A stretch of DNA of 64,000 bases from Ostrea edulis (GCF_947568905.1 NC_079170.1:84196001-84260000), one strand, 5' to 3'. Positions 10,185-33,417 are shown, counted from the first letter of the stretch. Notes: generated by a model not told the origin, from the sequence alone. Numbers and translations are program-made.

Positions 10185-11840
10185 TTATTTCATGTACTGA
10201 ATCACTTTCACTTTTCCTGAATGAACTAACCCTACCCACAACCTCCCCTCACTGTCCACGCTCAGTCCATCAGGATAATCTAGTCCACAATTATCCACAC
10301 ATCTCAGGAACTGTCCGTTCTGATCCAGGATGTGTAGACAGGCATTGTTGAAATCTGTCACAATGATCTGACCCATGGAGTCTGTCACTATATGTACAGG
10401 ATCAAATGATTCCTTCCTCCTGGCTGGTGTACCATCGTATCGGAATCGGACTCTTCCTGTCTTGTCAACCACGACCACAACCTTAGCATTACCATCAGAG
10501 GCACAGATGTCTCCATTGTTGTTCTCCACCACATACAGTGCATGTTTCCCTTCTTTATAGATTGATTTTCCATCTTCAATTATTTCCTGTTTCACTGTAT
10601 GTCCCTGATAACGGACAATTTTATGTTGGCTAAAATCAGTAGTACGCATACTGACCAGGATGTCCCCTGACTTAGTACAGCATAGTTTGACTGGACCCCA
10701 GCCCTGTGGTGTGGTTATCAGTGTCTCTGTTCTCCCGTGTCTGACAAGGTTCACAGTTCTATTGTAACCATCACTGTATACCAGTTCTCCTTGTCTGGTC
10801 ACTGTGATGTCATTAGGCCAGCCTGGACATGTGGAGGTGACAGTGTCCCGTACAGACCCGTGTATGTCAACACGTCTTATGGTTTTATCTTTACCACTAA
10901 CCCATACTTTATCCACTCCCACACAGGCAACACTGTATAGAGGATTAACTCCAGTAGGAATGGTTATAATTGATTTGGCTTGCTCTAACAGCTTTTGTAA
11001 AGATAAATAGGGGACTTCCTCTGTCAGACTGGACGGTGTTGTCTGTGTCAAGCTAGCCTTGTATTCTCCTAATTCCAGGCTGAGTTCTCTCCCTTGGACT
11101 GTGTTGGTTTTTAGTGATGGCAGTTTGATATCAATATCAGTAGGCATGTTTCTGTATTCCTGGAGTTTGGATTTGTAGTTAGTGACTGCAGACACATTGT
11201 TGGACTTCAGAATTTCTTTGTTTTGTTGAACTGTTTGGGTCATGTCTGGAATTTGATTTTTTATTTTGGATTGGTGAGAGTTTAGAGCAGCCAGGAGATT
11301 CTCTTTTATGGACTTCATCAAAGAACCGAGATGATTGAAAATGGTGTCGACTTCTTGGTGCCAGGATTTTCTGTGCTTTTCTTTTTCTTTGTCCAGTTCA
11401 TCAAATTCGGCCATTATAATAGATAATTTGCTTTTTGTTTCTTCGTTTTTCTTCTTGTACTGTGAAATAATGGTGGATTCAATTTCTTTGGTTTCCTTTT
11501 CAATATCATTTTTTTGTTTGTTGAAGATATCAGACATATCTCCATATTTGTGTCCATTATGGAGACCAAGCATGCACTTCAGGCAAACTGGAATATCACA
11601 TTGCTGGCAGTGGGCCTCACATCTCTGGTTTGTGTGAAATTCACACTCGGGAAAAACAAGTTGTATCTTTCTGTCTTTGAAATGAACGATGTCATGTGGT
11701 TGGTACTTGAACTTGTCCACGTGTTTACTAACACAGTCCACACACAAACTGAGTTGACAGTTGTTACAGAACTGCTGGGTAGGCTTGACACAAATGTCAC
11801 AGGTGATGACCTCCTGTGCTTGGGAGTTGGGCGTGGCCAT
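10185..11840 (-). CDS. TRIM-like protein without RING: 2 B-boxes, coiled coil, C-terminal NHL-type beta-propeller (551 aa, single coding exon)
   Basis: Uninterrupted ORF from MATPNSQ (ATG 11840). B-box motifs CDIC..FCNNC..LCVDC..H..H and CEFH..C..HCQQCDIPVCLKC..H..H. Propeller repeats (PNDITVTRQGELVYSD, DPVHIVTDSMGQIIVTD, PDGLSVDSEGRLWVG). Splice acceptor TTTATTACAG just upstream of the ATG. Confidence 0.92.
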   Translation of the reverse strand: MATPNSQAQEVITCDICVKPTQQFCNNCQLSLCVDCVSKHVDKFKYQPHDIVHFKDRKIQLVFPECEFHTNQRCEAHCQQCDIPVCLKCMLGLHNGHKYGDMSDIFNKQKNDIEKETKEIESTIISQYKKKNEETKSKLSIIMAEFDELDKEKEKHRKSWHQEVDTIFNHLGSLMKSIKENLLAALNSHQSKIKNQIPDMTQTVQQNKEILKSNNVSAVTNYKSKLQEYRNMPTDIDIKLPSLKTNTVQGRELSLELGEYKASLTQTTPSSLTEEVPYLSLQKLLEQAKSIITIPTGVNPLYSVACVGVDKVWVSGKDKTIRRVDIHGSVRDTVTSTCPGWPNDITVTRQGELVYSDGYNRTVNLVRHGRTETLITTPQGWGPVKLCCTKSGDILVSMRTTDFSQHKIVRYQGHTVKQEIIEDGKSIYKEGKHALYVVENNNGDICASDGNAKVVVVVDKTGRVRFRYDGTPARRKESFDPVHIVTDSMGQIIVTDFNNACLHILDQNGQFLRCVDNCGLDYPDGLSVDSEGRLWVGLVHSGKVKVIQYMK

Positions 11841-12159
11841 TATCTGTCTCACTGTAATAAAGAAAATCAATGATTCTTTAAAACCTAAAAACGGGAAATT
11901 GTAGAGCACAAGCTGGTGCTGAATTCACATTTTTGTTAAAAATTGTTCGATCGGGGGGGGGGGGGTATTACAGCCTCCATAGCTCTTCTCATGATATCTA
12001 CATGTAGCCAGAAGAAATCATCCTATGACTGGCAGTATGAACATCATTATAAACCCCTGCTCCTCCATTAGTTTAAACCAAATAGAAAATAAGGATCATC
12101 ATTTTCATTTAATCACTCATTTTAATACATGTATTCAGGTGCTTCCACATCATTTTGCA

Positions 12160-12730: not shown

Positions 12731-13479
12731 TAATCTCAACAACACCAAGTACCTAAAAGTGTCAAATTCACAAAGTTCATGCAAGGTCAATCATCAAATA
12801 CAAATAGTATCTAAAGCACTAAACTGACCAACAACATGAGCAGTTAAGATTAATTGTCATATTTTTGGCACAATTATTACCTGTCCCTTCCTCAGTACAA
12901 ATAAAGAAAGTTTTACATTAGCAAAATATGTTTAAAAAATAAATATATAAAAAATGCTAACACTAAATCTATAGCAAGAGGCCCATGGGGCATATCGCTC
13001 ACCTGAGTCACCTTGGCTCATATTTAAACTGTAACTACATCTGTTGTTTGAAATTGGACTAGATCTAGCTATATTTGAAAATTCAAATACTGTACTCAAT
13101 AAGTCTTTTTATTTCCTGTTGGATTTGAAAACTTTCTTGTGTCTCCACCCCCAACACGATGATGGGCTCCATTGGAAGTGTGATATCAAACACAATATAT
13201 ATAAGTTGTTGGGCATCTTTCTTCCAATTTGAAGCACAATATTGATTTCGTGAAAAAAATTACCTCCCTTTATTTTCAAACACATATTATCTACGTAAAA
13301 TTAAAATTAATTACCAATTACATATCGTCTCTAACAAAATAACAAACACAAAAACGAGTCATAAAAGAGACATTTTATTTCTTTTTAAATATTTTTCTTA
13401 TCAACATGATAAAATTCAACCGCGATAGTTCAGCAGCAAATGGCGTGACGGGCGGGTGTAAAAGCCGGAATGGGGCTGG

Positions 13480-14330
13480 AATGGGAGTAGTGACATGAAT
13501 TAAAATCACAATATCTCCGCTAATACTTGACATATTTTCATTGGATAAAGTTTCCGAACATCCGTGAAACAAGGACTATTAGAATATATGAAATATTTGA
13601 AATAAATTAATGCGGTATATTTAAAAACCTTGCCAGAATGGACCGAGCTCGAAAAAAATACTAATCTAAAATGAAGGAATAGACTCGTTTAACTGGCAAT
13701 ATCTCCTACACTACTTTGAGTATCTTCATTCGGTAAAGATTCCACATATCTGCAGATCCATACCGTCTAGAAAATATAAAACTGTTGAAGATATCTTATA
13801 GATAAATATACGAAAATCCTGCCGGAATGAAGAACGGTGTGCAATTTTAACAAGAATTCTGAGTAGTCCTTCTCGTGTAAACTACAATATCTCTTTTATA
13901 TTTGAATATTTTTTCATTCGGGAAAGTTTCCATTCATCTATGATACTACAGCTATCAGAATATATACAGTTTAATTATATTTACCTTTATCTATGGATGA
14001 AAACCCTGCCGGAATGGGAAAATATGGACCATTTTTTAGGTAAAATCATAGGTCGGAATGGAGGTAGTGACATAAACAAAATCGCAGTATCTCCGTTATT
14101 ATTCTATATATTTTCATTCGGTAAGGTTACACTACATCTGTAGAACCAGGGCTATTAGAATATATAAAACTCGTTTAAATAAATTAATAAGGTATTTTCA
14201 TAAATCTTGTCGAAATGGACCGAACTCGACAAAAAGCGTATCTAAAGTACTGCAGGGGATCTCAATAAAATGTAAATATCTCCTATTAGTACTTTAAATG
14301 CTTTCATTTGGTAAAGTTTCCACTCATGTA
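13480..14330 (+). repeat. Left subterminal degenerate tandem repeats of the MULE (~190-bp spacing, ~575-bp higher-order period)
   Basis: TTCATT.GGTAAAG and CCGGAATG motifs recur. 13480-13760 resembles 14055-14330. Confidence 0.7.
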
Positions 14331-14679
14331 TGGACCCAAAGTGTCAGGTAATTATAAACTGTGATATTTTGTGTGAATTCTTTTTTACAAAACTTCGTAC
14401 CGGAATGAACAGAGAATGTGCCAGCGAGAAAGCCTGTGAGCAAAAGTGTTTCTGCCCCCGGGATGAGGAGTGTGTCTGCGAGTGCGATGTGGATAAAAAT
14501 CACCAGCAAAATGAAGAATCGCGTCCTTAAAACAATCCATGCCATCAACCGGGATGGACATGCATCATGTGAGAGAGAAGAAACAAGCCTGCAAATGCTA
14601 ACAACGGAACCCGATGTGTGTGCTTATGTAAAATCGTTTGACAGCCATGGGGGTGTTGTGAAGAGTGCGTGCAGAAGCA

Positions 14680-15550
14680 CCCATAAAAAAGGTTGTGAGA
14701 GTGATGAGAAGAATGTGTGCAGAAGCACTCAGAATAAAGTTTGTGAGAGTGTTGAGAAGAATGTTTGCAGATGCACCCAGAAGAAAGTTTGTGAGAGTGA
14801 TGAGAAGAATATGTGCAGAAATATACAGAATAAAGTTTGTGAGAGTGGTGGGAAGAATGTGTGCAGATGCACCCAGAAGAAAGTTTGTGAGAGTGATGAG
14901 AAGAATATGTGCAGAAGTATCCAGAATGAAGTTTGTGAGAGTGATGAGACGAATGTGTGCAGAAGCACCCAGAGGAAAGTCTGTGAGAGTGTTGCGAAGA
15001 ATGTGTACAGAAGCACCCAGAAGAAAGTTTGTGAGAGTTGTAAGAAGAATATGTGCAGAAGTACCCAGAAGAAAGTTTCTGAGAGTGTTGAGAAGAATGT
15101 GTGCAGAAGCACCCAGAATGAAGTTTGTGAGAGTGATGAGAAGAATGTGTGCAGAAATATCCAGAAGAAAGTTTGTGAGAGTGATGAGAAGAATATGTGC
15201 AGAAATATCCAGAAGAAAGTTTCTGAGTGTTGAGAAGAATGTGTGCAGAAGCACCCAGAATGAAGTTTGTGAGCGTGATGAGAAGAATGTGTGCAGAAAT
15301 ATCCAGAAGAAAGTTTGTGAGAGTGATGAGAAGAATGTGTGCAGAAGCACCCAGAAGAAAGTTTGTGAGAGTGATGAGAAGGATGTGTGCAGAACTATCC
15401 AGAAGAAAGTTTGTGAGAGTGATGAGAAGAATGTGTGCAGAAGCACCCAGAAGAAAGTTTGTGAGAGTGATGAGAAGGATGTGTGCAGAACTATCCAGAA
15501 GGAAGTTTGTGAGAGTGATGAGAAGGATGTGTGCAGAACTATCCAGGAGA
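14680..15550 (+). repeat. 48-bp tandem repeat encoding Cys-rich 16-aa units (QKKVCESDEKNVCRST), about 18 copies
   Basis: Directly visible in ORFs 14418-15233 and 14665-15633, with a 2-nt deletion near 15228 switching frames. Confidence 0.9.
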
Positions 15551-15633
15551 ACGTGAAAGTGTCTAGCGACAAGAGTGATTCCGATTGTGAGAATAATGTG
15601 AAAGTGCTGAAAGGTGGCGGTGTTTTAACGTAG

Positions 15634-17950
15634 TCTGTAAACGAACCGATGGATCAAATCCAGATTACTGCTGCGCTTAAAAATCCGGATCCCGCTAAAA
15701 TTTGCGAAATTCCACCAGTGAAACCGGAGAGAAACCTATATGATAATCAGAAAAAACGCCGACGACTGTAGATGCGACCAGTATCAATGGTTAAACAATG
15801 GCAGTTCTTGTGTGTCGTCCGAGGGAGATATTCTACACCGTAAATATTTCAAGATTAAAATAGGTTGTCCCAAGTCTTCGTGAAACAGAAAAGCCGCAAG
15901 CTCAACGCGTTTCACCCGTAGCGCTTATTTTATGGAGTCCAACAAAGATCTAGTGCTAGTGCGTTATATCGGTGACGAATCCGTCTACATTCCGCTAACT
16001 TATGGTAACAACAAGAATAAAGAAAAGTGTGATTTTGTGCGTACGTGTCCGTCCGTCATGGATCAAATTAAGGAGGTATGTATACTACACCAGAGAAATA
16101 TGATATGGATGAAAAGTGGAGGAGATGTACAACAATATTTTGAAATTGAAAACTTTCAAATTTACTATATTTAGTCAAAACGTGGAGTTTTAGTTGTTAG
16201 CAATCCGGGGAAAAAATTAAAACCCTTGCTGGACTCGTACTCGCGATCTACAGTTCAGCAGTCGACGCGCTAACCTACTGAGCTATTCATCTATGCGATG
16301 ATTAAAGAAATGAATAGACAAAAATTTCTGATATTTATATTTTCATCCATATGTTAAAAGGAAGTCAGCCATTATGACGATGTAGAGTACCCCCTTAATG
16401 AGGATTCCGAAAGTGATGTCTCCCATGCAAATTTTCGATAAATTGAACGCGGCCAATAATGTTCCAAGTGTCGAATACATCGGTGTTATGAATGCGCGTG
16501 ATGTGAACCAAGTAAAGAACATTTCTAAACATGTGCGTGCTACTAAAAAACTGACTAAAGACGAAATTTATAACTTGGTGTTATTAGGTTATCATTTGGA
16601 GAGTTTCATACACGAAATCAGAAAATTTTTCTGATCTTGTTACTATTCTGGGTTTACCAGAAATATTTGAGATTTTCAATCAGTTACTGGATGTTGATGA
16701 TGCTAGTATTTCTATATGTTCAGGGTACGATACCACATTTAATTTGGGTGATTTTTATGTAACGCCTTTAATTTTCAGGCAGATACTTTTCGAGAGCAAA
16801 CCAGCAATCCCTTTAGCATTTCTAATCCACGAACGTAAGTATCAAAAATGTCACGAAAGGTTATTTGATTATATTGCAGAGAAAATTCCAAAAATCAAAC
16901 CCCCAAAAAATTACCATAGCCACCGAGAGGGAAAAGGGGGTTTCAAATGCTATTGCTAAAAGTTTGCCAAATTTTGTAAATCTGTTTTGTTGGAATCATT
17001 TAAAGCGTGATTTTAAGTTTTGGTTGCAAAAAGAAAACGGGCCTCAAGGTAACGAAATTGCTATTTACATTCAGGATTTGAGTAGTATTTTACAAAGCGA
17101 TAAAGAAAATGCCGAAAATATTATTACCGAAGTTGCATCGAAATGGTCACAGGCAGCAGTTCAATATTTCGATATACATGTACATTTGAAATCAGATATA
17201 TTAGCAAAATGAGTCATCCAGCAATTTCCTTGTCTGTACAATCCGTTTTCCGGGATAACAAACAACGCGTCAGAGAGTATAAATAACATTTTAAAACTAC
17301 ATGTTAGCGGCAAGGAACTTCCTGTAGATGCATTAGCTTTAAGTTTACAGTTACTACAATATCGGTATATTTATAATATTCAGTGTGGTTTGGCGGGTAT
17401 CGGGCCTTAGAAATTATTAGACATGTTTTCTGGCATAAAAATTACAAAAGACGAAATCATAATTCCAAACAAATTGATAGAACCAAGTAAAATTATAGAA
17501 TATGTTAAGGGTACTTTAGAAAAAAATACCCTGTTTGCGCTGCCGAAGATACTATTACTAGTACTTTTACAAATTCAGATTGTTCTTCCGAGAATTTAGA
17601 AGTAAATAATGAAAACCTAATTCAGGAACCAGTTCGAGGCGAACCAAAACAGAATATGTCACAAGCGTGTTTAGCTAAATTAACTGTTGAAAATAAGGGT
17701 GTTACATTTGTTGACGACCAGAAATCATTTATGATAAACGGTAGTACCAATAAAAAATACGCAGTTACTTTATTTCCTAAAGAAACTTGTCAATGCCCAG
17801 TTGCCGGTACTTGTTATCATATTTTAGCAGCGCGGTTAAAAATGGGGGATATTTCCGATACTAAAAGAGTTGTTAATTTGAAACAATTATCCGAAAATAA
17901 TTTGAAACGTAACGAAAAAAAAAAGCTGGTAAGAAAAAACTGCGACCTAA
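15634..17950 (+). pseudogene. MULE transposase (DDE) with SWIM zinc finger; multiple stops and frameshifts
   Basis: YDTTFNLGDFYVTPLIFR..PAIPLAFLIHERK (first D, ~16726); TEREKGVSNAI..LFCWNHLKRD (second acidic site and CxxH); ITNNASESINNILK (E, ~17270); CQCPVAGTCYHILAA (SWIM, ~17785). Confidence 0.9.
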
Positions 17951-18094
17951 CGATTATGATAAGGAAGTAATACCCGTGTCCAATTCTGCCATTGTTTTAG
18001 ACGAGAAAGACGATTTATGTCCATCGAAAAAAAGTAAAAAAAAATCGCCACCGATAGAAAGTGATAGACGGATCTAAGTCATAAAGCTAATATT

Positions 18095-18629
18095 TTGGAT
18101 TCCCGTGGTTGGTTATGTTCAAATATAATAAATAAGTCTTTAGAAATAATTTCGAAACAATTTAAAAATATAAACGGTTATCAACTAACAAATCTTGCTC
18201 CCGTATTTGATAAAGATTTAAACTCGTGGAAATGCAAAAAGGGATTCCAGCCTTCAAATTTGCCATCTGCACAAATTCACCACACAGGTCGTGATCACTG
18301 GGTTATTTCATTTCAAAATAAAGAAAACGAAATTTGTATTTTGGATAGTTTAAGCAGCACTAAAAACCATACCACTAACACACCGTCTCTCGAAATTCAA
18401 TTGTCTTTTATGGAAACAATAAACCGTCTGTGCAGTTAATTTATTTTAGAAAACCAGCAACAAAAAAATGGTTATGATTGTGGTTTATTCGCTATCGCCA
18501 ACTTAGTAGAGTTTTGTTTTAACGATGCGACATTTGAATTTAAAACCGAGTTTGTTGTAAATAAAATGCGAGAACATTTAATCAGTTGTTTAGAACATGG
18601 TCAATTTACTAAATTTCCACAAGAAACCA
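18095..18629 (+). pseudogene. Ulp1/SENP-type (clan CE) cysteine protease domain carried by the MULE
   Basis: GWLCSNII..QIHHTGRDHWV..ILDSL and, after a frameshift, QQQKNGYDCGLFAIA: His, Asp and Gln-x5-Cys catalytic pattern. Confidence 0.85.
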
Positions 18630-19039
18630 TAAATAATGAGATTGGTAAAGTTGGCTACTAGTAACCAGCTACTAGTAACTGGCTACTTAAAAAGAGAAAA
18701 GTTGGTTACTAGTAGCCAGCTACTTGAACCAGGAAAAGTTAGCTACTAGTAGCCAGTTACTAGTAGCTAGCTACTAAAAGTAAGAAAAGTTAGCTACTCG
18801 TAGCCAGCTACTACAAAATATAAAAGTTATAATTACTGATAACCAGCTACCAGATAAAGGTTAATGAGTTTGAAAATTATTATCTATCAGATTTATTTCT
18901 AAAGAGGACGAGGAGTCGTATGATATTTCAAGCTCAATTATCCCCAATTACATAACGTTGCAATACAAAATACGAATAAACTTTTTCAACTGAGTGTTTA
19001 CTTTAAAAATGATACGGATTGAATTCAGACCTTCATTCA

Positions 19040-21455
19040 TTTGATATACCATCCATTTGGAGATATCTGCTACTTTTACAATTTGATTCGAGTTACCCTG
19101 AAATTTCAACATTTGTATGAATACCGTAAGAAACTTTATGTTTGTATTAGATATCTGACGAATTTACAACTATACATATGGCAAGAAGTGATAGATTGTG
19201 TTTTGATACGCCACGTATTTTCAGATATCGCTCTTTAGGAAATCAGTTACTTACACATTTTGATTATCGGTACAATGAAATTTCAAGATCTGTGTGAATA
19301 CTCCGTGTTTATATCATATATTTAACTAACTTACAACGATACGTATGGCGAGTAGTGATATTGGGTATCGTGATATGTCATGAATTTTCAGATGTCACGC
19401 TTAAGGAAGTCAACTACTTATACCTTTTGATGGCAGGTAACCTGAAATTTCAAGTTTTTCGCAAATATCTTAAGGCACGTTATGTTTGTATTAGATATCT
19501 CATTAATTTACCAATATTCATGTAAAGAGGAGTGGTATTAGATATCTTCATCAGCCATCAAGTTTCAGATATCACCATTAAGGAAGTCAGCTACTTATAC
19601 CTTTTGATTCCTGGTAACCTGAAATTTCAAGATTTTCGTAGATATCTTAAGGAAATTTGTGTTTATATTAGATATCTGACTAATTTACAACTATCAAAGT
19701 GAAGAGGAGTGATACTAGGTATCTTGATATGCAATCAATTTTCAGATATCACGTTTAAGGAAGTCAGCTACTTATACCTTTTGATTCCGGGTAACCTGAA
19801 ATTTCAAGTTTTTCATAAATATCTTAAAGAACTCCTTGTTTGTATTAGATATCTGACTAATTTACAACTATCCATATGAAGTGGAGTGGTATTAGGTATC
19901 TTGATATGCCATTAATTATCAGATATCACCCTTAAGGAAGTCAGCTACTTATACTTTTTGATTGAAGGTAACATAAATTTCAAGTTTTTTATCAATATTT
20001 TAAGGAAGTCTGTGTTTGTATTAGATATCTGACTAATTTACAATTATCCACGTGAAGAGGAGTGATATTAGGTATCTTGACATGCCATCAATTTTCAGAT
20101 ATCACGCTTAAGGAAGTCAGCTACTTATACCTTTTCATTGCAGGTAACCAGAAAATTCAAGTTTTTAGAAAATATTTTAGAAGCTCCGTGTTTGTTTTAG
20201 ATATCTGATTAATTTACCAATGCACATATGACAAGATCTGATATTAAGTATCTTGATATAACATCAATTTTGAGATATCACGCTTAAGGAAGTCAGCTAC
20301 TGATACCTTTTCATTCCAGGTAACCTGAAATTTCATTATTTTCATAAATATCTTAAGGAACTCCTAGTTTGTATTAGATATCTGACTAACTTACAACTAT
20401 CCACGTCAAGAGGAATGATATTAGGTATCTTGATATGCCAACAATTTTCAGATATCACGCTTAAGGAAGTCAGCTACTTATACCTTTTGATTCCCGGTAA
20501 CCTGAAAATTGAAGTTTTCCATATATATCCTTAGGAACTCTGTGTTTGTATTAGATATCTGACTAATTTACAATTATCCATGTGAAGAGGAATGACATTA
20601 GGTATCTTGATATGCCATCAATTTTCAGATATCACGCTTAAGGAAGTCAGCTACTTATTCCTTTTCATTGCAGGTAACCTGAAATTTCATGTTTTTCATA
20701 AATATCTTAAGGAACTCCTAGTTTGTATTAGATATCTGACTAACTTACTACTATCCACGTCAAGAGGAATGATATTAGGTATCTTGATATGCCAACAATT
20801 TTCAGATATCACGCTTAAGGAAGTCAGCTACTTATACCTTTTAATTTCAGGAAACCTAAAATTTAAAGTTTTTAGCAAATATTCTATGGAACTCTGTGTT
20901 TGTATTAGATATCGTATTAATTTACCAGTGCACATATGACAAGGAGTTATATTAGGTATCTTGATATGCCATCAATATTCAGATGTCACGCTTAAGGAAG
21001 TCAGCTACTTACACCTTTTGATTCTAGGTAACCTAAAATTTCAGGTTTTTCGAAAATATCCTAAGAAACTCTGTGTTTGTGTTAGATATTTCATTGATTT
21101 ACCATCTCACATATTACAAGGAATGATATTAGGTATCTTGATATCACCCTTAATGAAGTCAGTTACTTATACCTTTTGATTCCTGGTGACTTGAAATTTC
21201 AACTTTTTCGTAAATATCTTAAGTAACTCTGCTTTTGTATTAGATATCTGACTAACTTACAACTATTCACATGAAGAGGAGTGATATTAGGTATTTTGAT
21301 ATACAATTTATTTTCAGATATCACCCTCAAGGAAGTCAGCTACTTATACCTTTTGATTCAAGTTGTCCGTAAATATCTTGAGGAATTATGCGTTTGTATT
21401 AGATATCTGACTAACTTACAACCATCCACGTGAAGAGGAGTGATATTAGGTATCT
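19040..21455 (+). repeat. ~177-bp satellite array, left arm (about 14 monomers)
   Basis: The C of the recurring TCAGATATCAC motif falls at 19566, 19743, 19920 and 20096 (spacing 176-177 bp). Confidence 0.95.
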
Positions 21456-24000
21456 TGATACCTATTATCACACCTCTTCACGTAGATAGTAGTTAACTAG
21501 TCAGATATCTAACAAAAACACAGAGTTCCTTAAGCTATATACAAAACAATTTAAATTACAGGATGTCTGGAATGAAAAGGTATAAGTAGCTGACTTCGTC
21601 GAACGTGATATCTGAAAATTGATCGCATATCAAGACAGTTCATATAAACCCCTGTAATATCAGCAAAAAAAATTAGTCAGATATCTAACATATCTATCTG
21701 AAAATTGATGGCATATCAAGATACTTGATATCACTCCTCTTCACGTGGATAGTAAATAATTAGTCTGATATGTAATACAAACACAGTTCCTTAAAAGATA
21801 TCTACAAAACATTTGAAATTTCAGATAACCAGGAATCAAAAGGTATAAGTAGCTAACTTCCTTTAGCGTGATATCTGAAAATTGATGGCATATTAAGATA
21901 CTTAATATCACTCCTTGTAATATGTGAGATGGTTAATTAATGATGTATCTAATACAAAAGCAGAGTTCCTTAAGATATGTACGGAAAACTTGAAATTTCA
22001 GGTTGCCTAGAATTAAAAGCTATAAGTAGCTGACTTCCTTACTCCTGATATCTGAAAATTGATTGATGGCATATTAAAATACTTAATATCACTCCTTGTC
22101 ATATGTGTGATTGTAAATTAATGAGATATCTAACACAAACACAGAGTTCCTTAACATATTTGCGAAAACCTGACATTTTAGGCTATCTGGAATCAAAAGG
22201 TATATGTAGCTGACTTCCTTATGGGTGATATCTGAAAATTGATGGCATATCAAGATACCTAGTATCACTCCTCTTGACTTTGGTAGTTGTAAATTAGTCA
22301 GATATCTAATACAAACGCAGAGTTCCTTAAGATATGTACGGAAGACTTGAAATTTCAGGTTACCTAGAATCAAATGGTATAAGTAGCTGACTTCCTTAAG
22401 AGTGATATCTGAAAATTGATGGCTTATAAAGATATCTAATACCACTACTCTTCATGTGAATATTGGTAAAATAATGAGAAATCCAATACAAACATGAAGT
22501 GCCTTAAGATATTTGCAAAAACTTTGAAATTTCATGTTACCTGCAATCAAAAGGTATACGTAGTTGACTTCCTTAAGGGTGATATCTGAAAATTGATGGC
22601 ATATCAAGATATCTAATATTCCTTCTCTTCGCGTGGATAGTTGTATGTTAGTCAGATACAACTGTATCTAATACAATCACAGAGTTCTTTAAGATATTTA
22701 TTAGAAAACTTGAAATTTCAGGTTACCAGGAATCAAAAAGTATAAGTAACTGACTTCTTTAAGCCTGATATCTCAAAATTGATGTTATAACAAGATACCT
22801 AATATCAGATCTTGTCATATGTGCATTGGTAAATTAATCAGATATCTAAAACAAACAGGAGCTCCTCCTTAAAATATTTTCTAAAAACTTGAAATTTCTG
22901 ATTACCTGCAATGTAAAGGTATAAGTAGCTGACTTCCTTATGGGTGATATCTGAAAATTGATGGCATATTAAGATACCTAATATCACTCCTCTTCACGTG
23001 GATAATTGTAAATTAGTCAGATATCTAATACAAACAAGTTCTTTAAGATATTTATGAAAAACTTGAAATTTCAGGTTACCCGGAATCAAAAGGTATAGTA
23101 GCTGACTTCCTTAAACGTGATATCTGAAAATTGATGGCATATTAAGATACTTAATATCACTCCTTGTCATATGTGAGATGGTAAATTTATGAGATATATA
23201 ATACAAAGACAGAGTTCCTTAAGATGTTTGCGAAAAACCTGAAATTTTAGACTACCTGGAATCAAAAGGTATATGTAGCTGACTTCCTTATGGGTGATAT
23301 CTGAAAATTGATGGCATATCAAGCTAACTAGTATCACTCCTCTTCATTTTGATAGTTGTAAATTAGTCAGATATCTAATATAAACACAAATTTCCTTAAG
23401 ATATCTACGAAAATCTTGAAATTTCAGGTTACCAGGAATCAAAAGGTATAAGTAGCTGACTTCCTTAATGGTGATATCTGAAAATTGATGGCTGATGAAG
23501 ATATCTAATACCACTCCTCTTTACATGAATATTGGTAAATTAATGAGATATCTAATACAAACATAACGTGCCTTAAGATATTTGCGAAAAACTTGAAATT
23601 TCAGGTTACCTGCCATCAAAAGGTATAAGTAGTTGACTTCCTTAAGCGTAACATCTGAAAATCCATGACATATCACGATACCCAATATCACTACTCGCCA
23701 TACGTATCGCTGTAAGTTAGTTAGATATATGATATAAACACGGAGTATTCACACAGATCTTGAAATTTCATTGTACCGATAATCAAAATGTATAAGTAAC
23801 TGATTTCCTAAAGAGCGATATCTGAAAATACGTGGCGTATCAAAACACAATCTATCACTTCTTGTCATATGTATAGTTGTAAATTCGTCAGATATCTAAT
23901 ACAAACATAAAGTTTCTTACGGTATTCATACAAATGTTGAAATTTCAGGGTAACTCGAATCAAATTGTAAAAGTAGCAGATATCTCCAAATAGATGGTAT
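21456..24000 (-). repeat. ~177-bp satellite array, right arm, opposite orientation (about 14 monomers)
   Basis: Monomers are reverse complements of the left-arm monomers (GTGATATCTGAAAATTGATGGCATATCAAGATACC...). Confidence 0.95.
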
Positions 24001-24405
24001 ATCAAATGAATGAAGGTCTGAATTCAATCCGTATCATTTTTAACGTAAACACTCAGTTGAAAAAGTTTTGGTATTTTGCATTGCAACGTTATGTAATTGG
24101 GAATAATTGAGCATGAAATTTCATACGACTCCTCGTCCTCTTTAGAAATAAATCTGATAGATAATAATTTTCAAACTCATTAACCTTTATCTGGTAACTG
24201 GTTATCAGTAATTATAACTTTTATATTTTGTAGTAGCTGGCTACGAGTAGCTAACTTTTCTTACTTTTAGTAGCTGGTTACTAGTAACTGGCTACTAGTA
24301 GCTAACTTTTCCTGGTTCAAGTAGCTGACTACTAGTAGCCAACTTTTCTCTTTTTAAGTAGCCAGTTACTAGTAGCTGGTTACTAGTAGCCAACTTTACC
24401 GATCT

Positions 24406-24600
24406 TAAATAATACTTCAACTTTAAAATACAAAACAATGAAAATTGGTTGTAATTGTTCCTGTAACTTTCCAGACTGGATTGATGAAATGATAGGTTGT
24501 GAAAAGCAGTGCAATATATGGAAACATTGTAAATGTGCAATTGTGCCTGATTATTGTAAAGAAGTGGATTTGTTCGGAGCATGATCGTGAATAAAAGATG
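24406..24600 (+). pseudogene. PHD-like finger: C-terminal continuation of the Ulp1 ORF beyond the foldback insertion
   Basis: CNCSCNFPDWIDEMIGCEKQCNIWKHCKC, then KKWICSEH after a 1-nt frameshift. In frame with ..FPQETINN once the insertion is removed. Confidence 0.8.
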
Positions 24601-24943
24601 TTTCTGTTGGTTTTGTGTTGATTTGATATGGTAATTATCTTCAAGTGTCAGTGTGCAATATATGGAAACATTGTAAATGTGCAATTGTGCCTGATTATTG
24701 TAAAGAAGTGGATTTGTTCGGAGCATGATCGTGAATAAAAGATGTTTCTGTTGGTTTTGTGTTGATTTGATATGGTAATTATCTTCAAGTGTCAGTGTGC
24801 AATATATGGAAACATTGTAAATGTGCAATTGTGCCTGATTATTGTAAAGAAGTGGATTTGTTCGGAGCATGATCGTGAATAAAAGATGTTTCTGTTGGTT
24901 TTGTGTTGATTTGATTATTTGGTAATTATCTTCAAGTGTCAGT
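24509..24943 (+). repeat. Near-perfect 144-bp tandem triplication covering the PHD end, stop codon and AATAAA
   Basis: Unit starts at 24509, 24653 and 24797. Confidence 0.95.
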
Positions 24944-25214
24944 CCCTGTGCACCTTGTTTTTCACACCTTTTGAGTTTTGGGGAACGTTAAGCCTAACCG
25001 TGTTATCCTGGCCTAGCGGAGTATTGGCGGAGATATTGCGATTTTAATTAATTTACTCCCATTCCGGCTTTTACACCTTACCTGGCGTGACGTCACACAA
25101 AAACTTATGGAGAGTTAATATTTTCGAAAGTGTGTTTATTTTTAATTTTAGTGTAAATGACGGCAATTAAAAGGGTGACCGATCCAGAAACCAGGTGGGG
25201 CACATCGACTGATG

Positions 25215-25280
25215 TTATTTATACCGGGTACTGCTGTTATTTATACCGGGTACTGCTGTTATTTATACCGGGTACTGCTG
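25215..25280. repeat. 22-bp tandem repeat x3 (TTATTTATACCGGGTACTGCTG)
   Basis: Three exact copies. Confidence 0.95.
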
Positions 25281-25449
25281 TGTTTTTACCGCAATATATC
25301 ACCGGAGCAGATTTTGTCGAAATCGCGTTGCATTCCTGTCGCGTTGCATTCCTGTCGATTCGCTCGCTATGCTCGCGAAGCTCAGTGGTAGTATTTATGC
25401 CCATTTCTCATATATTTCTACTTTATTGATAAAATTGCCGACTCCTGTG

Positions 25450-30650: not shown

Positions 30651-31260
30651 ATGATATTATGACATACATTTTCTATATACAGTACGTTATTTTACTTAAA
30701 AGTCACCCACACGACATCGTGCCGCTATAATGGTACTGCGAACACGCTCTGTCACGTGCATTATTTCAAGTGGAATAAAAGTAAGAATGTTTAATCAAGC
30801 TTCACAGCGCTTTCCTCCTCCGTAAGTCAATAGACTGATACAATTTCAAGTTTTATATGTTGGCGTAGGGTGTATTGCTATATGAAGGAATGGCAATTTA
30901 ATATGCATTTTTACATCCTCTTTAAATCCCAAAAAACCACGAATGCTGTGTGTTTCTGAAATAGAACTATGGCGTTTCTCACACAAATCATGACTAAGAT
31001 CAAAGGTTCGAAATTCAGGGAAATTGCATGTCTCTGGTGCATAATTCACTCTCTAAAGTTCTTCTTTATTTATTTACGTGATTTTGAAATACCGTTGCTT
31101 CGTTAAGAGCTGTTTAAATGTTATTATATGTAGATTTCTCAATTAGCACTGAAAGTGTATATATGCTTCATAAAACAAATCGACGCTTCTCTAATTGCAA
31201 GTCTTCAGTAATGCTTTTAGTTATACGACTTTCTTTTATTAAAAAAGATACATTTTTTAC

Positions 31261-33229
31261 CTTCTTGTATCTCTGGAATAGTGATGTCATTCTTATCAAT
31301 TTCCAAGGTATCGGTTAATTCAAAATTTCTGCAAGTTGGGAAATTTGAAGGACTTTTAGGGAGACGTGGAAAAGATTCGTTAAGAAGCATAGCCATTCCA
31401 TTAGAAGAGTGGAGTTCAATATGGCAGTGCATTATCCACAATCCAGGGTTATTGGCCTTGATTCTCACCACAACATAACCTCCGCTAGGGACAATAACTG
31501 TATCCTTACGAGGTGGGTTCTGAAGCTCTAAACCAGGCACATTTCCGTTCCGCCAAGATCCATTCCTCCAGGTAGCATCGTTACAGAAACTTTTCTGTTG
31601 AGGCACACCACCTCTGCAATCAACGTCTGCATTTTGTGATATAATTTCACCAGTACTTTCATTATATGTTGGGTAACCCATTTTCAAAACATAAAAAGAA
31701 TGCCCGTGCATATGTACTGGATGCGCCCATCCCGAGCCTACACCCATGTTTAAGAACACCATTTGAATTGTGTCGCCATGACGCAGACTTATGGAATGCG
31801 TACAGTTACATAGTTTCTGTTCCCCACACCCTGCCTGTTCACATTGAGATTTGATTTCTTGTGGTTGTGTTAGACCAGACACGGTGGGTAATTCTAACGA
31901 CCTGCCATTGACAGATCCTGGAAAGGTATCGATGCCCGGAAAAGCAAAATTCAAAAAATATTCCTGAAACTTTCCTTCAATAGCAGGGGGAGCTGGATCG
32001 TCCGACGCTGCCGCCCGAAGGTGATCAAACCGAAAACATTCCATGTGTTCGTTTTCAGGAAAATAGGTAAAAGGACAATTTAAGACAATGCATATATTTT
32101 CTGCTGTGCATTGTTTTTGAGTTGTCGTGGGATCTTCCTCGGGCGCTCCGTGATATCTTAAAATAGCTTCAGCGACTGTTATTCGAGTAACTTCCAAAGT
32201 TTTCCCTCGAATCCAATAATTTCCAACCGACTGGTTTGCTACGATTATAAAATCATATCGCTCGCCAGGGTTAATAATGAAAAAGTCAACAATGGTGGGC
32301 TGCACAGGATATCCATCTGACTCTATAATTGTCATGATATGGTCATCAACAGAAATTCTGAACGGATAAAGAGCCCCTACACCGATCACACGAAATCGAT
32401 AGGTGGTACCCTGTGTGACCCGGAAAACTTCCAGTGGGGCCTCGTTGTGAATTTTCTCTTCAAAGTTTGTATAGTATCGTCCTCTACCGTTGACCAGCCC
32501 TGATTGTGCCTTAAGAAGGCTGAAGAAGCTACCGTCAGTGGATTGCGAAGGTTTATATTTAGTTCTATTTTCTATGATTTTGTTGATCATGTATTGATAT
32601 CCCAAGTCAGCGTCCCAGTCATGATTCCATTCTTGAATTTGCATGATATGTTCTGGAAAAGGATTAGGCTCATATTTACGGATGATAAATGCACCCAACA
32701 AACCATTAATTCGCTGAGACCCTGCATGAGAGTGGTACCAAAACGTACCCGGCGGATAAGCCTTAAATCTATATGTGAATGTTTGTCCCGATTCAATGGG
32801 GCATTGGGACACAAAAGGGACTCCATCCATAAAAGGGGTATTTTCTTGGTGTAAACCGTGCCAGTGAACCGTGACGGAGTCTGAGTGTAAATGATTCTTT
32901 ACGTGTATCACCACAGTTTGTCCTTCGTATACAATGATGTCAGGGCCTGGGAGTGTTCGATTCGCTACAACTATTAATCTTCTTGATTCCCATCCGTCTG
33001 CCGTCACGATCTCGTTGACGGGTATCTGTTCAGCCTGAGATGTATTGGTCACTTTGTAATTGTATAGTTTGCCCTCTTTTGAATATACTGCTCGGTTTCT
33101 AAGATTATTCATTGTTAAGTAATGTTCAATAACCAGTGACGTTTCACAGACTCGTGCTGTCTTCTCGCATGTGTAGCTGAATCCTGACGTCACAGATAAC
33201 ATCAGAACTAGGATATGTTCGATGGTCAT
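31261..33229 (-). CDS. Laccase-type three-domain multicopper oxidase, main exon (signal peptide and whole catalytic region); 736 aa with the last exon
   Basis: Copper motifs HWHG, WYHSH, HPVHMHGH and HCHIELHSSNGM. ATG at 33229 in ACCACCATGA context just after an acceptor AG at 33239-33240. GT donor at 31260. Spliced length 2211 nt is a whole number of codons. Confidence 0.95.
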
Positions 33230-33417
33230 GGTGGTCAACTGTAAACATGATAGAAATTAAGATAATTCATGGTTTCTTTAATCACTTATCACATAGTGTA
33301 CATTTGAATTATCCGTCAATTATGAAAATCAATTCTCGCCAATTATGCTGTCTCAAGACAATGTATTTTGTCTACCATTACAACCTGTCGTTGAGTAGTA
33401 AAATGGTGTCTGGCATG

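What the first reader, a model, noticed from the sequence alone, without database searches (positions are those of the whole stretch)
13441..25091. Complete Mutator-like transposon encoding transposase-SWIM-Ulp1 protease-PHD
Seen: an exact 9-bp TSD (TGGCGTGAC), ~65-80-bp imperfect TIRs starting GG, and in order the MULE DDE motifs, a SWIM finger, a His/Asp/Cys protease and a PHD-like finger. Established: MULEs make 9-11-bp TSDs, and some carry Ulp1-type SUMO proteases. Inference: a deSUMOylase coupled to a histone-reader-like finger could counter SUMO-dependent transposon silencing. Without the foldback insert the element is about 5.9 kb. This copy is dead (stops, frameshifts, second catalytic Asp reads Glu in TERE).
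Basis: partly seen in the sequence, partly recalled or inferred. Interest (0 to 1): 0.7.

Follow-up and report, generated by a model that had tools for sequence, protein, structure and literature searches.

The report
Dead oyster Mutator transposon, CAMTA-type domain
This is a broken copy of a known type of cut-and-paste "jumping gene" (a Mutator-like element whose enzyme also carries a SUMO-protease and a histone-reading finger); what may be new is that its DNA-binding front end is the same domain used by the CAMTA calcium-signalling transcription factors.

Summary
Window 13450-25082 is a Mutator-like element (MULE) with an exact 9-bp target duplication and imperfect terminal inverted repeats. 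Its one broken reading frame encodes DDE transposase, SWIM, a Ulp1/C48 protease and a PHD finger.

- **Protease and PHD belong to the transposase:** a sister copy with its own 9-bp duplication carries SWIM-C48-PHD in one 368-aa frame. Intact public relatives, such as a 1034-aa intronless ORF, carry everything in one protein. pN is about 0.2 against pS about 0.7.
- **Possibly new:** the N-terminal DNA-binding domain is a CG-1 domain, the CAMTA DNA-binding domain. Pfam scores pass the curated cut-off in the sister-lineage copy and eight relatives, and the predicted fold matches CAMTA best. I found no paper linking CG-1 to transposases.
- **Module swapping:** related elements replace or add Macro, OTU and CXXC modules.
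- **Untested:** the anti-silencing role proposed for the protease.

Other agents of this scan had noted different Mutator and Ulp1-bearing transposons in this genome.

The parts
13441..13449 (.). left copy of the 9-bp target-site duplication TGGCGTGAC
   Evidence: identical to 25083-25091
13450..13527 (+). left terminal inverted repeat (begins GGGCGGGTGTAAAAGCCGGAATGGG)
   Evidence: alignment with the right end; the same terminus occurs in sister copies
13502..14350 (+). left subterminal arm: 4-5 units of a ~188-bp repeat, each carrying the GCAATATCTCC motif (candidate transposase-binding sites)
   Evidence: families D12, D17; motif found only in the element's arms: 4 hits against 0.86 expected; sister copies have this arm inverted at both ends
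14555..15668 (+). 48-bp minisatellite, ~23 units, upstream of the likely start codon; open in the transposase frame but probably 5' leader
   Evidence: (D1); intact relatives start 3-45 aa before the CG-1 domain
15592..16075 (+). N-terminal CG-1-like (WRKY/GCM1-clan) DNA-binding domain, broken by one frameshift (15726/15731) and stops at 15631 and 15881; DxxxW motif CDQYQW at 15773-15790
   Evidence: The domain is 58-68% identical to the L010 copy and P0001, whose domains pass the Pfam CG-1 cut-off.
16076..16399 (.). nested ~320-bp high-copy interspersed repeat (SINE/MITE-like), boundaries +/-8 bp, flanked by TTAAGGAG / TTAATGAG
   Evidence: absent from sister copies; depth 1e5-1e6 in public runs; no tRNA or Rfam match
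16416..17527 (+). MULE DDE catalytic core: D1 16729-31, second Asp replaced by Glu 16925-27, CWNH motif 16988-99, E 17273-75; frameshifts near 16628 and 16896, stops at 17210 and 17408
   Evidence: (MULE E=2.3e-4 on a piece); relatives pass the cut-off (P0044 34.4 bits, P0093 37.4 bits)
17788..17832 (+). SWIM zinc finger (CQCPVAGTCYH)
   Evidence: E=0.095 on the piece; P0036 25.2 bits, P0047 27.6 bits, cut-off 19.6
18071..18637 (+). Ulp1/SENP-type C48 cysteine protease: His 18296-98, Asp 18344-46, Gln 18461-63, Cys 18479-81; in-frame stop at 18437
   Evidence: 30 bits, cut-off 20.7, on the sister ORF; invariant H, D, Q, C; Ulp1 7e-14, SENP1 6e-12, SENP8 5e-11
18638..24405 (.). nested foldback element (arms of 177-bp tandem repeats), 8-bp duplication TAAATAAT at 18630-37 and 24406-13; splits the ORF between C48 and PHD
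   Evidence: (I1, I14); absent from six sister copies
24405..24591 (+). C-terminal PHD finger (Cys4-His-Cys2-His variant, first pair CxC), with a 5-codon deletion and a frameshift at about 24563; stop codon at 24592-24594
   Evidence: invariant C, C, C, C, H, C, C; profile against PDB: Spp1 6e-12, CFP1, DIDO1, TAF3, BPTF, ING
24509..24940 (+). 144-bp tandem triplication covering the ORF end; a single copy in sister elements
   Evidence: (D10)
25020..25082 (-). right terminal inverted repeat; the right arm is reduced to ~65 bp compared with 580-900 bp in sister copies
25083..25091 (.). right copy of the 9-bp target-site duplication TGGCGTGAC

Best explanation
**What it is.** Window 13450-25082 is a dead, nested-into copy of a low-copy Mutator-like (MULE) cut-and-paste DNA transposon of a bivalve. 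Notes from other agents of this scan call the genome flat oyster.

**The protein.** The active form of the family encodes one intronless protein of about 1000 aa. In order it carries:
- a CG-1-type (WRKY/GCM1-clan) DNA-binding domain;
- a MULE DDE catalytic core with a CxxH motif;
- a SWIM zinc finger;
- a Ulp1/SENP-type C48 protease;
- a PHD finger.

**How it most likely works.**
- Inferred: the N-terminal domain binds the repeated motifs in the long subterminal arms.
- Established for MULEs: the DDE core cuts and pastes the element and makes 9-bp duplications.
- Inferred, about 50%: the PHD finger tethers the transposase to histone H3 tails of active chromatin.
- Inferred: the C48 protease removes SUMO, or NEDD8, from nearby proteins. 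I give about equal odds to the two target sets, silencing factors and DNA-break repair factors.

**State of this copy.** It cannot do any of this. It has at least 7 frameshifts, 5 stops, Glu for the second catalytic Asp, two nested insertions, a tandem triplication and a shortened right arm.
For: **Ends.** Exact 9-bp duplication and inverted repeats. A second copy has its own 9-bp duplication, GTAAATGTA.

**Family in this genome.** At least 9 coding copies and about 25-30 ends.

**Domains.**
- MULE and Transposase_mut score above the Pfam cut-off in relatives (P0044, P0093, P0115).
- C48 scores 30-49 bits against a cut-off of 20.7, with invariant His/Asp/Gln/Cys and Ulp1/SENP as the best PDB matches.
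- The PHD profile hits H3K4me3-reader PHD fingers down to 6e-12, and Pfam PHD passes its cut-off in P0047, P0101 and P0115.
- CG-1 passes its cut-off in the L010 copy and in P0001, P0003, P0005, P0037, P0085, P0093, P0130 and P0140. The language-model neighbours are CG-1. An AF2 model of pLDDT 81.5 is closest to CAMTA in the ESM Atlas (TM 0.57-0.63), and to NAC, SSR4, WOPR and WRKY in PDB.

**One protein.**
- L003:1309-2412 is a 368-aa SWIM-C48-PHD frame.
- P0115 is a 1034-aa ORF at L050:169-3273.

**Selection.** pN is about 0.2 and pS about 0.7 over C48 and PHD between two oyster lineages.

**Real DNA.** The copy itself is present, letter for letter, in contigs of four public runs from two studies.
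Against: - The window's own pieces score below the Pfam cut-offs because they are broken: MULE 22 bits, SWIM 12.7, C48 13-21, and PHD and CG-1 give no hit. Their assignment rests on 58-90% identity to sister copies and relatives.
- No intact copy was seen among the nine copies examined in this genome.
- The oyster family's PHD lacks the usual aromatic residue before the first Cys pair, so H3K4me3 reading is uncertain.
- No RNA run holds the stretch.
- The roles of the DNA-binding domain, the protease and the PHD finger are all inferred; none was measured.
- The inverted repeats of the foreign intact relatives were not captured on their contigs.
Confidence: 0.92

Rival explanations
1. One reading: the Ulp1-type deSUMOylase, aimed by the PHD reader, strips SUMO from silencing machinery on the element's chromatin and so counters SUMO-dependent transposon silencing.
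For: - The C48 catalytic residues and the PHD zinc ligands are conserved under purifying selection in a transposon setting.
- The best PDB matches are SUMO proteases Ulp1 and SENP1/2/5.
- Other transposons carry chromatin 'eraser' enzymes thought to escape silencing, for example TET/JBP in fungal DNA transposons (PMC12730594).
Against: - No functional data exist.
- SENP8 (NEDD8) matches almost as well as SENP1, so the substrate is open.
- Related elements carry Macro (ADP-ribose) or OTU (ubiquitin) modules in the same position. ADP-ribose, ubiquitin and SUMO together are hallmark marks of DNA-break signalling rather than of silencing.
- Bao et al. 2010 proposed the repair reading.
- PHD fingers of this subclass read active chromatin, not silenced chromatin.
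Confidence: 0.3
2. The protease and PHD are captured host gene fragments (a Pack-MULE-like cargo) and are not part of the transposase.
For: MULEs are known to capture host fragments (PMC6446971). The window copy alone shows the modules only as broken pieces separated by a 5.8-kb insert.
Against: - There are single uninterrupted frames from SWIM through C48 to PHD in a sister copy, and from CG-1 through MULE to PHD in the 1034-aa and 1088-aa relatives.
- The same order recurs in mussels, pearl oyster and metagenomic relatives.
- pN is far below pS.
Confidence: 0.03
3. The element belongs to another SWIM/Ulp1-bearing superfamily, such as Zisupton or Ginger1, rather than to MULE.
For: Zisupton and Ginger1 transposases also carry Ulp1, and Ginger1-9_HM also carries PHD.
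Against: - The duplication is 9 bp in two copies, whereas Zisupton makes 8 bp (PMC12730594).
- Pfam MULE and Transposase_mut pass their cut-offs in relatives, and no integrase-type domain was found.
Confidence: 0.03

Closest known systems
Ulp1-bearing Mutator transposons (hydra and lancelet MuDR entries of Repbase; plant KI-MULEs), as summarised by Bao, Kapitonov and Jurka 2010 (PMC2836005)
   Same: A MULE transposase with a C-terminal Ulp1/C48 domain. That paper's Figure 1e aligns Ulp1 and PHD domains of Ginger1 and Mutator transposases.
   Different: This is a bivalve lineage with long subterminal-repeat arms. It has an N-terminal CG-1-type DNA-binding domain that is not mentioned there. Relatives also carry Macro, OTU or CXXC modules.
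Rehavkus group of MULE-like elements (Repbase; Dupeyron et al. 2019, PMC6446971)
   Same: 9-bp duplication, inverted repeats of up to hundreds of bp, one ORF with a PHD finger, and minisatellites inside the element.
   Different: Rehavkus is reported from arthropods and annelids, with the minisatellite before the 3' end. Here the large 48-bp array is 5' of the ORF. No Ulp1 is listed for Rehavkus, and sequence kinship could not be tested because no Rehavkus sequence was at hand.
CG-1 DNA-binding domain of CAMTA transcription factors (Pfam PF03859; placed in the WRKY/GCM1 clan by Holm 2022, PMC9252788)
   Same: The sequence matches nearly the whole model (positions 7-114 of 116) above the curated cut-off. 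It has the DxxxW motif, the predicted fold is closest to CAMTA, and it shares CG-1's structural kin (NAC, SSR4, WOPR, WRKY).
   Different: There are no TIG, ankyrin or IQ modules, and the domain is fused to a DDE transposase. It scores 28-36 bits against 84 bits for the oyster's own CAMTA exon, so it is a distant relative and not a recent capture.
WRKY/GCM1-type N-terminal DNA-binding domains of MULE transposases, and the transcription factors derived from them (FAR1/FHY3 and others; Babu et al. 2006, cited in PMC9252788)
   Same: The same position in the protein and the same clan of fold. The only sequence matches in PDB are WRKY domains (E 0.15).
   Different: This is a zinc-less CG-1 flavour rather than the zinc-binding WRKY or FLYWCH types.

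Membership tests
MULE / Mutator superfamily | 9-11 bp target-site duplication | tested here: met
   9/9 TGGCGTGAC in the window; 9/9 GTAAATGTA in copy C6a
MULE / Mutator superfamily | terminal inverted repeats, often long | tested here: met
   about 63-78 bp in the window; 580-900 bp inverted arms in sister copies
MULE / Mutator superfamily | DDE transposase matching the MULE / Transposase_mut profiles, with a CxxH motif after the second Asp (the motif is from my own knowledge of Yuan and Wessler 2011) | tested here: met
   Relatives pass the cut-off: P0044 MULE 34.4 and Transposase_mut 25.6 bits, P0093 37.4, P0115 33.2. The window piece scores 22 bits (E 2.3e-4), below the cut-off because it is broken. 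D, (D to E), E and CWNH were located.
MULE / Mutator superfamily | zinc finger (SWIM or CCHC) downstream of the DDE core | tested here: met
   SWIM 25.2 and 27.6 bits in P0036 and P0047 (cut-off 19.6); the window motif at 17788-17832 is weak (E 0.095)
Peptidase C48 (Ulp1/SENP) | match to PF02902 above the curated cut-off | tested here: met
   30 bits on the sister ORF L003:1309-2412; 49.4 bits in P0115; profile against PDB gives Ulp1 7e-14
Peptidase C48 (Ulp1/SENP) | catalytic His-Asp-Cys with oxyanion Gln | tested here: met
   invariant H81, D97, Q137, C143 in A7; all four are present in the window copy
Peptidase C48 (Ulp1/SENP) | isopeptidase activity on SUMO (or NEDD8) | not testable with these tools
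   Needs an enzyme assay. SENP1 and SENP8 match nearly equally.
PHD finger | Cys4-His-Cys3 ligand spacing | tested here: met
   Invariant C, C, C, C, H, C, C, with a last ligand of C or H. The variant has a CxC first pair, as in ING/BPTF-type fingers.
PHD finger | profile match to known PHD fingers | tested here: met
   The family profile A2 hits 80 PDB PHD chains, best 6e-12. Pfam PHD passes its cut-off in P0047, P0101 and P0115. The oyster sequences alone give no Pfam hit.
PHD finger | aromatic cage for H3K4me3 | tested here: inconclusive
   The Trp of CxxWxH is conserved, but the aromatic residue before the first Cys pair is N, C, S or D in most members.
CG-1 domain (CAMTA DNA-binding domain) | match to PF03859 above the curated cut-off of 23.5 bits | tested here: met
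   L010 copy 35.3 bits. P0001 28.2, P0003 29.5, P0005 32.1, P0037 28.8. P0085 36.5, P0093 29.4, P0130 29.7, P0140 32.7. The window's broken pieces give no hit but are 58-68% identical to these.
CG-1 domain (CAMTA DNA-binding domain) | fold of the CG-1 / WOPR / NAC / SSR4 subgroup with the DxxxW motif (Holm 2022) | tested here: met
   AF2 model pLDDT 81.5. The top three ESM Atlas hits are CAMTA, TM 0.57-0.63. PDB hits are NAC, SSR4, WOPR and WRKY at E about 1e-3. The CDQYQW motif is present.
CG-1 domain (CAMTA DNA-binding domain) | sequence-specific binding of CGCG-type boxes | not testable with these tools
   The arms carry a repeated GCAATATCTCC motif and no CGCG box. Binding was not measured.
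CAMTA transcription factors (whole protein) | CG-1 followed by TIG, ankyrin and IQ modules | tested here: not met
   CG-1 is followed by MULE, SWIM, C48 and PHD. This is not a CAMTA.
Rehavkus | 9-bp duplication, PHD finger, minisatellite before the 3' inverted repeat | tested here: inconclusive
   The duplication and PHD criteria are met. The 48-bp array is on the 5' side, and a 144-bp x3 array near the 3' end exists in this copy only.
Rehavkus | transposase sequence kinship to Rehavkus entries of Repbase | not testable with these tools
Zisupton | 8-bp target-site duplication | tested here: not met
   9 bp in two copies; the 8-bp rule is from PMC12730594

The most novel reading that the evidence does not exclude
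The CG-1 DNA-binding domain of the CAMTA transcription factors shares direct ancestry with, or was derived from, the N-terminal DNA-binding domain of a clade of metazoan Mutator transposases. That clade carries CG-1, DDE, SWIM and a swappable 'eraser plus chromatin reader' tail. CAMTA would then join FAR1/FHY3, WRKY and GCM1 as a transcription-factor family whose DNA-binding domain is tied to MULEs. The tail appears as C48 with PHD, as Macro, or as OTU with CXXC. This would point to a general transposon strategy of pairing a remover of SUMO, ubiquitin or ADP-ribose with a reader of active chromatin.
Probability: 0.35. Interest if true: 0.7.

Novelty: new variant of a known kind. Interest (0 to 1): 0.45.

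Why it matters
As first described, this is an ordinary dead transposon of a published kind, a Mutator with Ulp1 and PHD.

Two things make it worth a note:
- **A sequence-level bridge to CG-1.** It links Mutator transposases to the CG-1 domain, which so far had been tied to the WRKY/GCM1 clan only through predicted structures. This makes the origin of the CAMTA DNA-binding domain testable by phylogeny.
- **A natural series of swapped modules.** The clade offers C48, Macro or OTU together with PHD or CXXC, and intact public relatives exist. With these one could ask experimentally whether such enzymes serve anti-silencing, break repair or integration targeting.

Tried and rejected
**Searches that gave little or nothing**
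- Pfam on the window's own stop-free pieces gave only sub-threshold hits. I therefore moved to sister copies and relatives.
- The profile of the N-terminal domain against PDB sequences gave only weak WRKY hits, at E 0.15 and 1.1. No CG-1 structure is solved.
- Foldseek against PDB gave no hit below 1e-3, but the top rows are exactly CG-1's known structural kin.
- The contigs of the intact foreign relatives (L050, L051) do not reach the element ends, so no inverted repeats or duplication could be read there.
- ARAGORN and Rfam found nothing in the element. My by-eye impression that the 320-bp nested repeat is tRNA-derived is therefore not supported.
- The search for RNA runs found none on record. 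The four runs laid are DNA-like contigs and say nothing about expression or splicing.
- Literature searches for CG-1 or CAMTA together with transposase, MULE or WRKY-GCM1 found no paper making the link. The library lacks most subscription journals and Repbase Reports.

**Hypotheses rejected**
- Zisupton and Ginger membership, and the captured-cargo (Pack-MULE) reading, were considered and rejected; see the rival explanations.

**Steps not taken**
The more distant CG-1/MULE lineages with long open frames at C6:42.47 Mb, C4:94.26 Mb, C7:82.84 Mb and C5:29.43 Mb could therefore not be read.


Full report
**1. The observation**

The window is one 64-kb stretch of a chromosome-scale piece, C7:84196001-84260000, of an 895-Mb, 35% G+C genome. 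Notes from other agents of this scan call it flat oyster.

The nine bases TGGCGTGAC stand at 13441-13449 and again at 25083-25091. Just inside them the sequence begins GGGCGGGTGTAAAAGCCGGAATGGG on the left. Read in reverse complement, the right end begins GGTAAGGTGTAAAAGCCGGAATGGG. The two ends align over about 63-78 bases with one 15-bp indel. A 9/9 match at fixed positions next to inverted ends is not a chance event, at about 4e-6. The same structure recurs elsewhere in the genome: copy C6a (C6:48.97 Mb) has the same termini and its own 9-bp duplication, GTAAATGTA.

**2. Anatomy of the window copy**

From left to right the copy contains:
- **Left arm, 13502-14350.** It is made of 4-5 units of a ~188-bp repeat. 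Each unit starts with a GCAATATCTCC-like motif. In the whole window this motif occurs only in the element's arms: three times on the left, once inverted on the right, against 0.86 expected by chance.
- **48-bp minisatellite, 14555-15668,** about 23 units.
- **Coding region, 15592-18637 and 24405-24591,** on the + strand.
- **144-bp unit repeated three times, 24509-24940**.
- **Right end.**

Comparison with nine other copies shows what is peculiar to this one.
- The 5768-bp foldback at 18638-24405 is an insertion with an 8-bp duplication, TAAATAAT. Six sister copies read straight across the empty site.
- A ~320-bp interspersed repeat at about 16076-16399 is a second insertion. It is absent from sister copies and present at huge depth in public runs. 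ARAGORN and Rfam do not recognise it.
- The 144-bp triplication is a single copy elsewhere.
- Sister copies carry the ~188-bp-repeat arm inverted at both ends, over 580-900 bp. The window copy's right arm has shrunk to about 65 bp.

The reading frame is broken by several kinds of damage:
- at least seven frameshifts, near 15726, 16628, 16896, 17527-17596, 17922-17943, 18074 and 24563;
- stops at 15631, 15881, 17210, 17408 and 18437;
- a five-codon deletion in the PHD finger;
- Glu in place of the second catalytic Asp (ATEREKG here, VTDREKG in relatives).

It is real DNA and not an assembly artefact: contigs of four public runs from two studies match it without a difference over several stretches.

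**3. What the protein is**

The window's pieces alone give only sub-threshold Pfam hits, so I used longer frames from sister copies and public relatives.
- **One frame in a sister copy.** Copy C6a has one uninterrupted 368-aa frame from the SWIM finger through the protease to the PHD finger and the stop (L003:1309-2412). It scores 30 bits on Peptidase_C48, against a cut-off of 20.7.
- **A more divergent lineage.** This copy (L010, 68-72% DNA identity) keeps four long pieces.
- **Relatives in other animals.** Word searches found relatives in mussels, pearl oyster and hard clam, plus an octocoral hit (P0048) that aligns over the SWIM and protease regions only and ends before the PHD finger. A third search found 668 proteins in the length range allowed.
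- **Intact full-length members.** P0115 is 1034 aa, encoded by a single intronless ORF at L050:169-3273. It reads CG-1 (weak), MULE 33.2 bits, C48 49.4 bits, PHD 28.9 bits. P0093 is 1088 aa and reads CG-1 29.4, MULE 37.4 and a weak PHD. P0044 has MULE 34.4, Transposase_mut 25.6 and SWIM.
- **Protease.** Its His, Asp, Gln and Cys are invariant in the alignments. A profile of the domain finds yeast Ulp1 (7e-14), SENP1 (6e-12) and SENP8 (5e-11) in PDB. It is therefore a Ulp1/SENP-type enzyme, and whether it acts on SUMO or NEDD8 is open.
- **C-terminal finger.** It has invariant C, C, C, C, H, C, C plus a last Cys or His. Its profile finds 80 solved PHD fingers, led by the H3K4me3 readers Spp1, CFP1, DIDO1, TAF3, PHF2, BPTF and ING.
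- **Selection.** Between the two oyster lineages, non-synonymous differences are far rarer than synonymous ones over both modules: pN about 0.2 and pS about 0.7. Synonymous sites are near saturation, so the ratio of 0.11-0.19 is rough.

Protease and finger are therefore working parts of the transposase and not captured cargo.

**4. The N-terminal domain**

- **Pfam.** The N-terminal piece of the L010 copy matches CG-1, the DNA-binding domain of the calmodulin-binding transcription activators (CAMTA). The match covers model positions 7-114 of 116 at 35.3 bits, against a cut-off of 23.5. Eight relatives from different sources also pass the cut-off. In P0001, P0085, P0093 and P0140 the CG-1 match lies on the same protein as the MULE domain.
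- **The window copy.** It has the same domain at 15592-16075, 58-68% identical to the L010 copy and P0001, but split by a frameshift and a stop.
- **Independent leads.** The language-model neighbours of the domain are CG-1 clusters; their score of 0.84 makes this a lead only. An AlphaFold model of pLDDT 81.5 is closest to three CAMTA clusters in the ESM Atlas, with TM 0.57-0.63 over 110-123 residues. In PDB it is closest to NAC, SSR4, WOPR and WRKY domains. Those are exactly the families that Holm (2022, PMC9252788) joined with CG-1 inside the WRKY/GCM1 clan.
- **Motif.** The DxxxW motif that paper highlights is present, as CDQYQW.
- **PDB sequence matches.** The only ones for the domain profile are WRKY domains, and they are weak.
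- **Distance from the host gene.** In the oyster genome the host's own CAMTA exon scores 84 bits, and the transposon copies score 29-36. The transposon domain is thus a distant relative and not a recent copy of the host gene.

MULE transposases are known to carry WRKY/GCM1-type N-terminal domains (Babu et al. 2006, cited), so the position is as expected and only the CG-1 flavour is new. Four literature searches found no paper linking CG-1 or CAMTA to transposases. The searchable library is incomplete, however.

**5. Relatives swap the tail**

- P0092 carries Macro, C48 and PHD, and P0055 carries MULE and Macro.
- On a marine metagenome scaffold, the MULE-SWIM ORF P0044 is followed by frames for a CXXC finger (5.9e-15) and an OTU protease (2.2e-10). 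Whether these belong to the same transcript is not shown.
- The clade thus pairs removers of SUMO, ubiquitin or ADP-ribose with readers of active chromatin (PHD, CXXC).

**6. How it most likely works**

- **Established for MULEs:** the DDE core excises and reinserts the element and makes 9-bp duplications.
- **Inferred:** the CG-1-type domain binds the repeated motifs of the long arms.
- **Inferred:** the PHD finger tethers the enzyme to H3 tails. One aromatic cage position is not conserved here, so H3K4me3 reading is uncertain.
- **Inferred:** the protease removes SUMO or NEDD8 from nearby proteins.
- **Anti-silencing versus repair:** The Macro and OTU variants fit the older proposal of Bao et al. 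2010 equally well, namely that such enzymes modulate break-repair signalling. The PHD subclass points to active rather than silenced chromatin.
- **Insertion site:** the element sits about 1.5 kb upstream of a TRIM/B-box-NHL gene (10185-11909, minus strand). This agrees with a 5'-of-gene preference but is a single case.

**7. Comparison and novelty**

- Ulp1 in Mutator transposons of hydra, lancelet and plants, and an alignment of Ulp1 and PHD domains of Ginger1 and Mutator transposases, were published in 2010 (PMC2836005).
- Rehavkus elements share the 9-bp duplication, PHD finger and minisatellites (PMC6446971). Kinship to them could not be tested.
- Zisupton is excluded by its 8-bp duplication.
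- The CG-1-type front end and the module swapping are, as far as I could check, undescribed, so I rate the whole as a new variant of a known kind with moderate interest.

**8. Limits**

- No RNA data were available.
The intact natural relatives make that unnecessary.

Noticed in passing
own genome: C2:165-181 kb, C10:520-561 kb, C9:3.268-3.279 Mb (query = window 13510-13830): The ~188-bp subterminal repeat unit of this transposon also forms long tandem arrays, with hits stepping every ~190 bp at 75-81% identity. Two of the arrays lie near chromosome ends. The transposon arm and a satellite DNA therefore share a unit; which came first is unknown.
   Followed up: partly
L049:3589-3804 and L049:4419-5000: On a marine metagenome scaffold, a related MULE-SWIM ORF (P0044) is followed by frames for a CXXC zinc finger (E 5.9e-15) and an OTU protease (E 2.2e-10). 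They stand where the oyster family has C48 and PHD. Whether they are one transcript is not shown.
   Followed up: partly
proteins P0092 (aa 535-652) and P0055 (aa 681-798): Relatives of the same transposase clade carry a Macro (ADP-ribose-binding or hydrolase) domain, with E values of 1e-33 to 1e-34. P0092 also has C48 and PHD.
   Followed up: partly
window 16076-16399: A ~320-bp very high-copy interspersed repeat is inserted in the transposase gene (3444 first-look candidates in the genome; depth 1e5-1e6 in public runs). It is flanked by TTAAGGAG / TTAATGAG, and ARAGORN and Rfam do not recognise it.
   Followed up: partly
window 18638-24405: The foldback element is built of 177-bp tandem repeats, with arms 95-97% complementary and an 8-bp duplication TAAATAAT. 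Its terminal 340 bp carry short TACTAGTAGCCAGC-type repeats. It is the subject of another finding of this scan.
   Followed up: partly
window 14665-15633: The 48-bp minisatellite stays open (322 codons) in the same frame as the transposase. A single 46-bp unit changes the encoded 16-residue repeat half-way through. Intact relatives start just before the CG-1 domain, so the array is probably leader sequence, but this is not settled.
   Followed up: partly
window 10185-11909 (-) and 31217-33238 (-): The flanking genes are a 574-aa B-box/TRIM-NHL-type ORF, whose start lies ~1.5 kb from the transposon's left end, and a 673-aa multicopper-oxidase (laccase-like) ORF.
   Followed up: no
own genome: C6:42472677, C4:94257533, C7:82836444, C5:29428092: More distant CG-1/MULE lineages (33-39% identity to the N-terminal query) sit in open frames of 424-622 aa; the C6 and C4 matches have no internal stop, while the C7 match holds one TGA and the C5 match two TAA.
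   Followed up: no
window 25208-25286: A short 22-bp tandem repeat of three units lies just outside the right end of the element.
   Followed up: no
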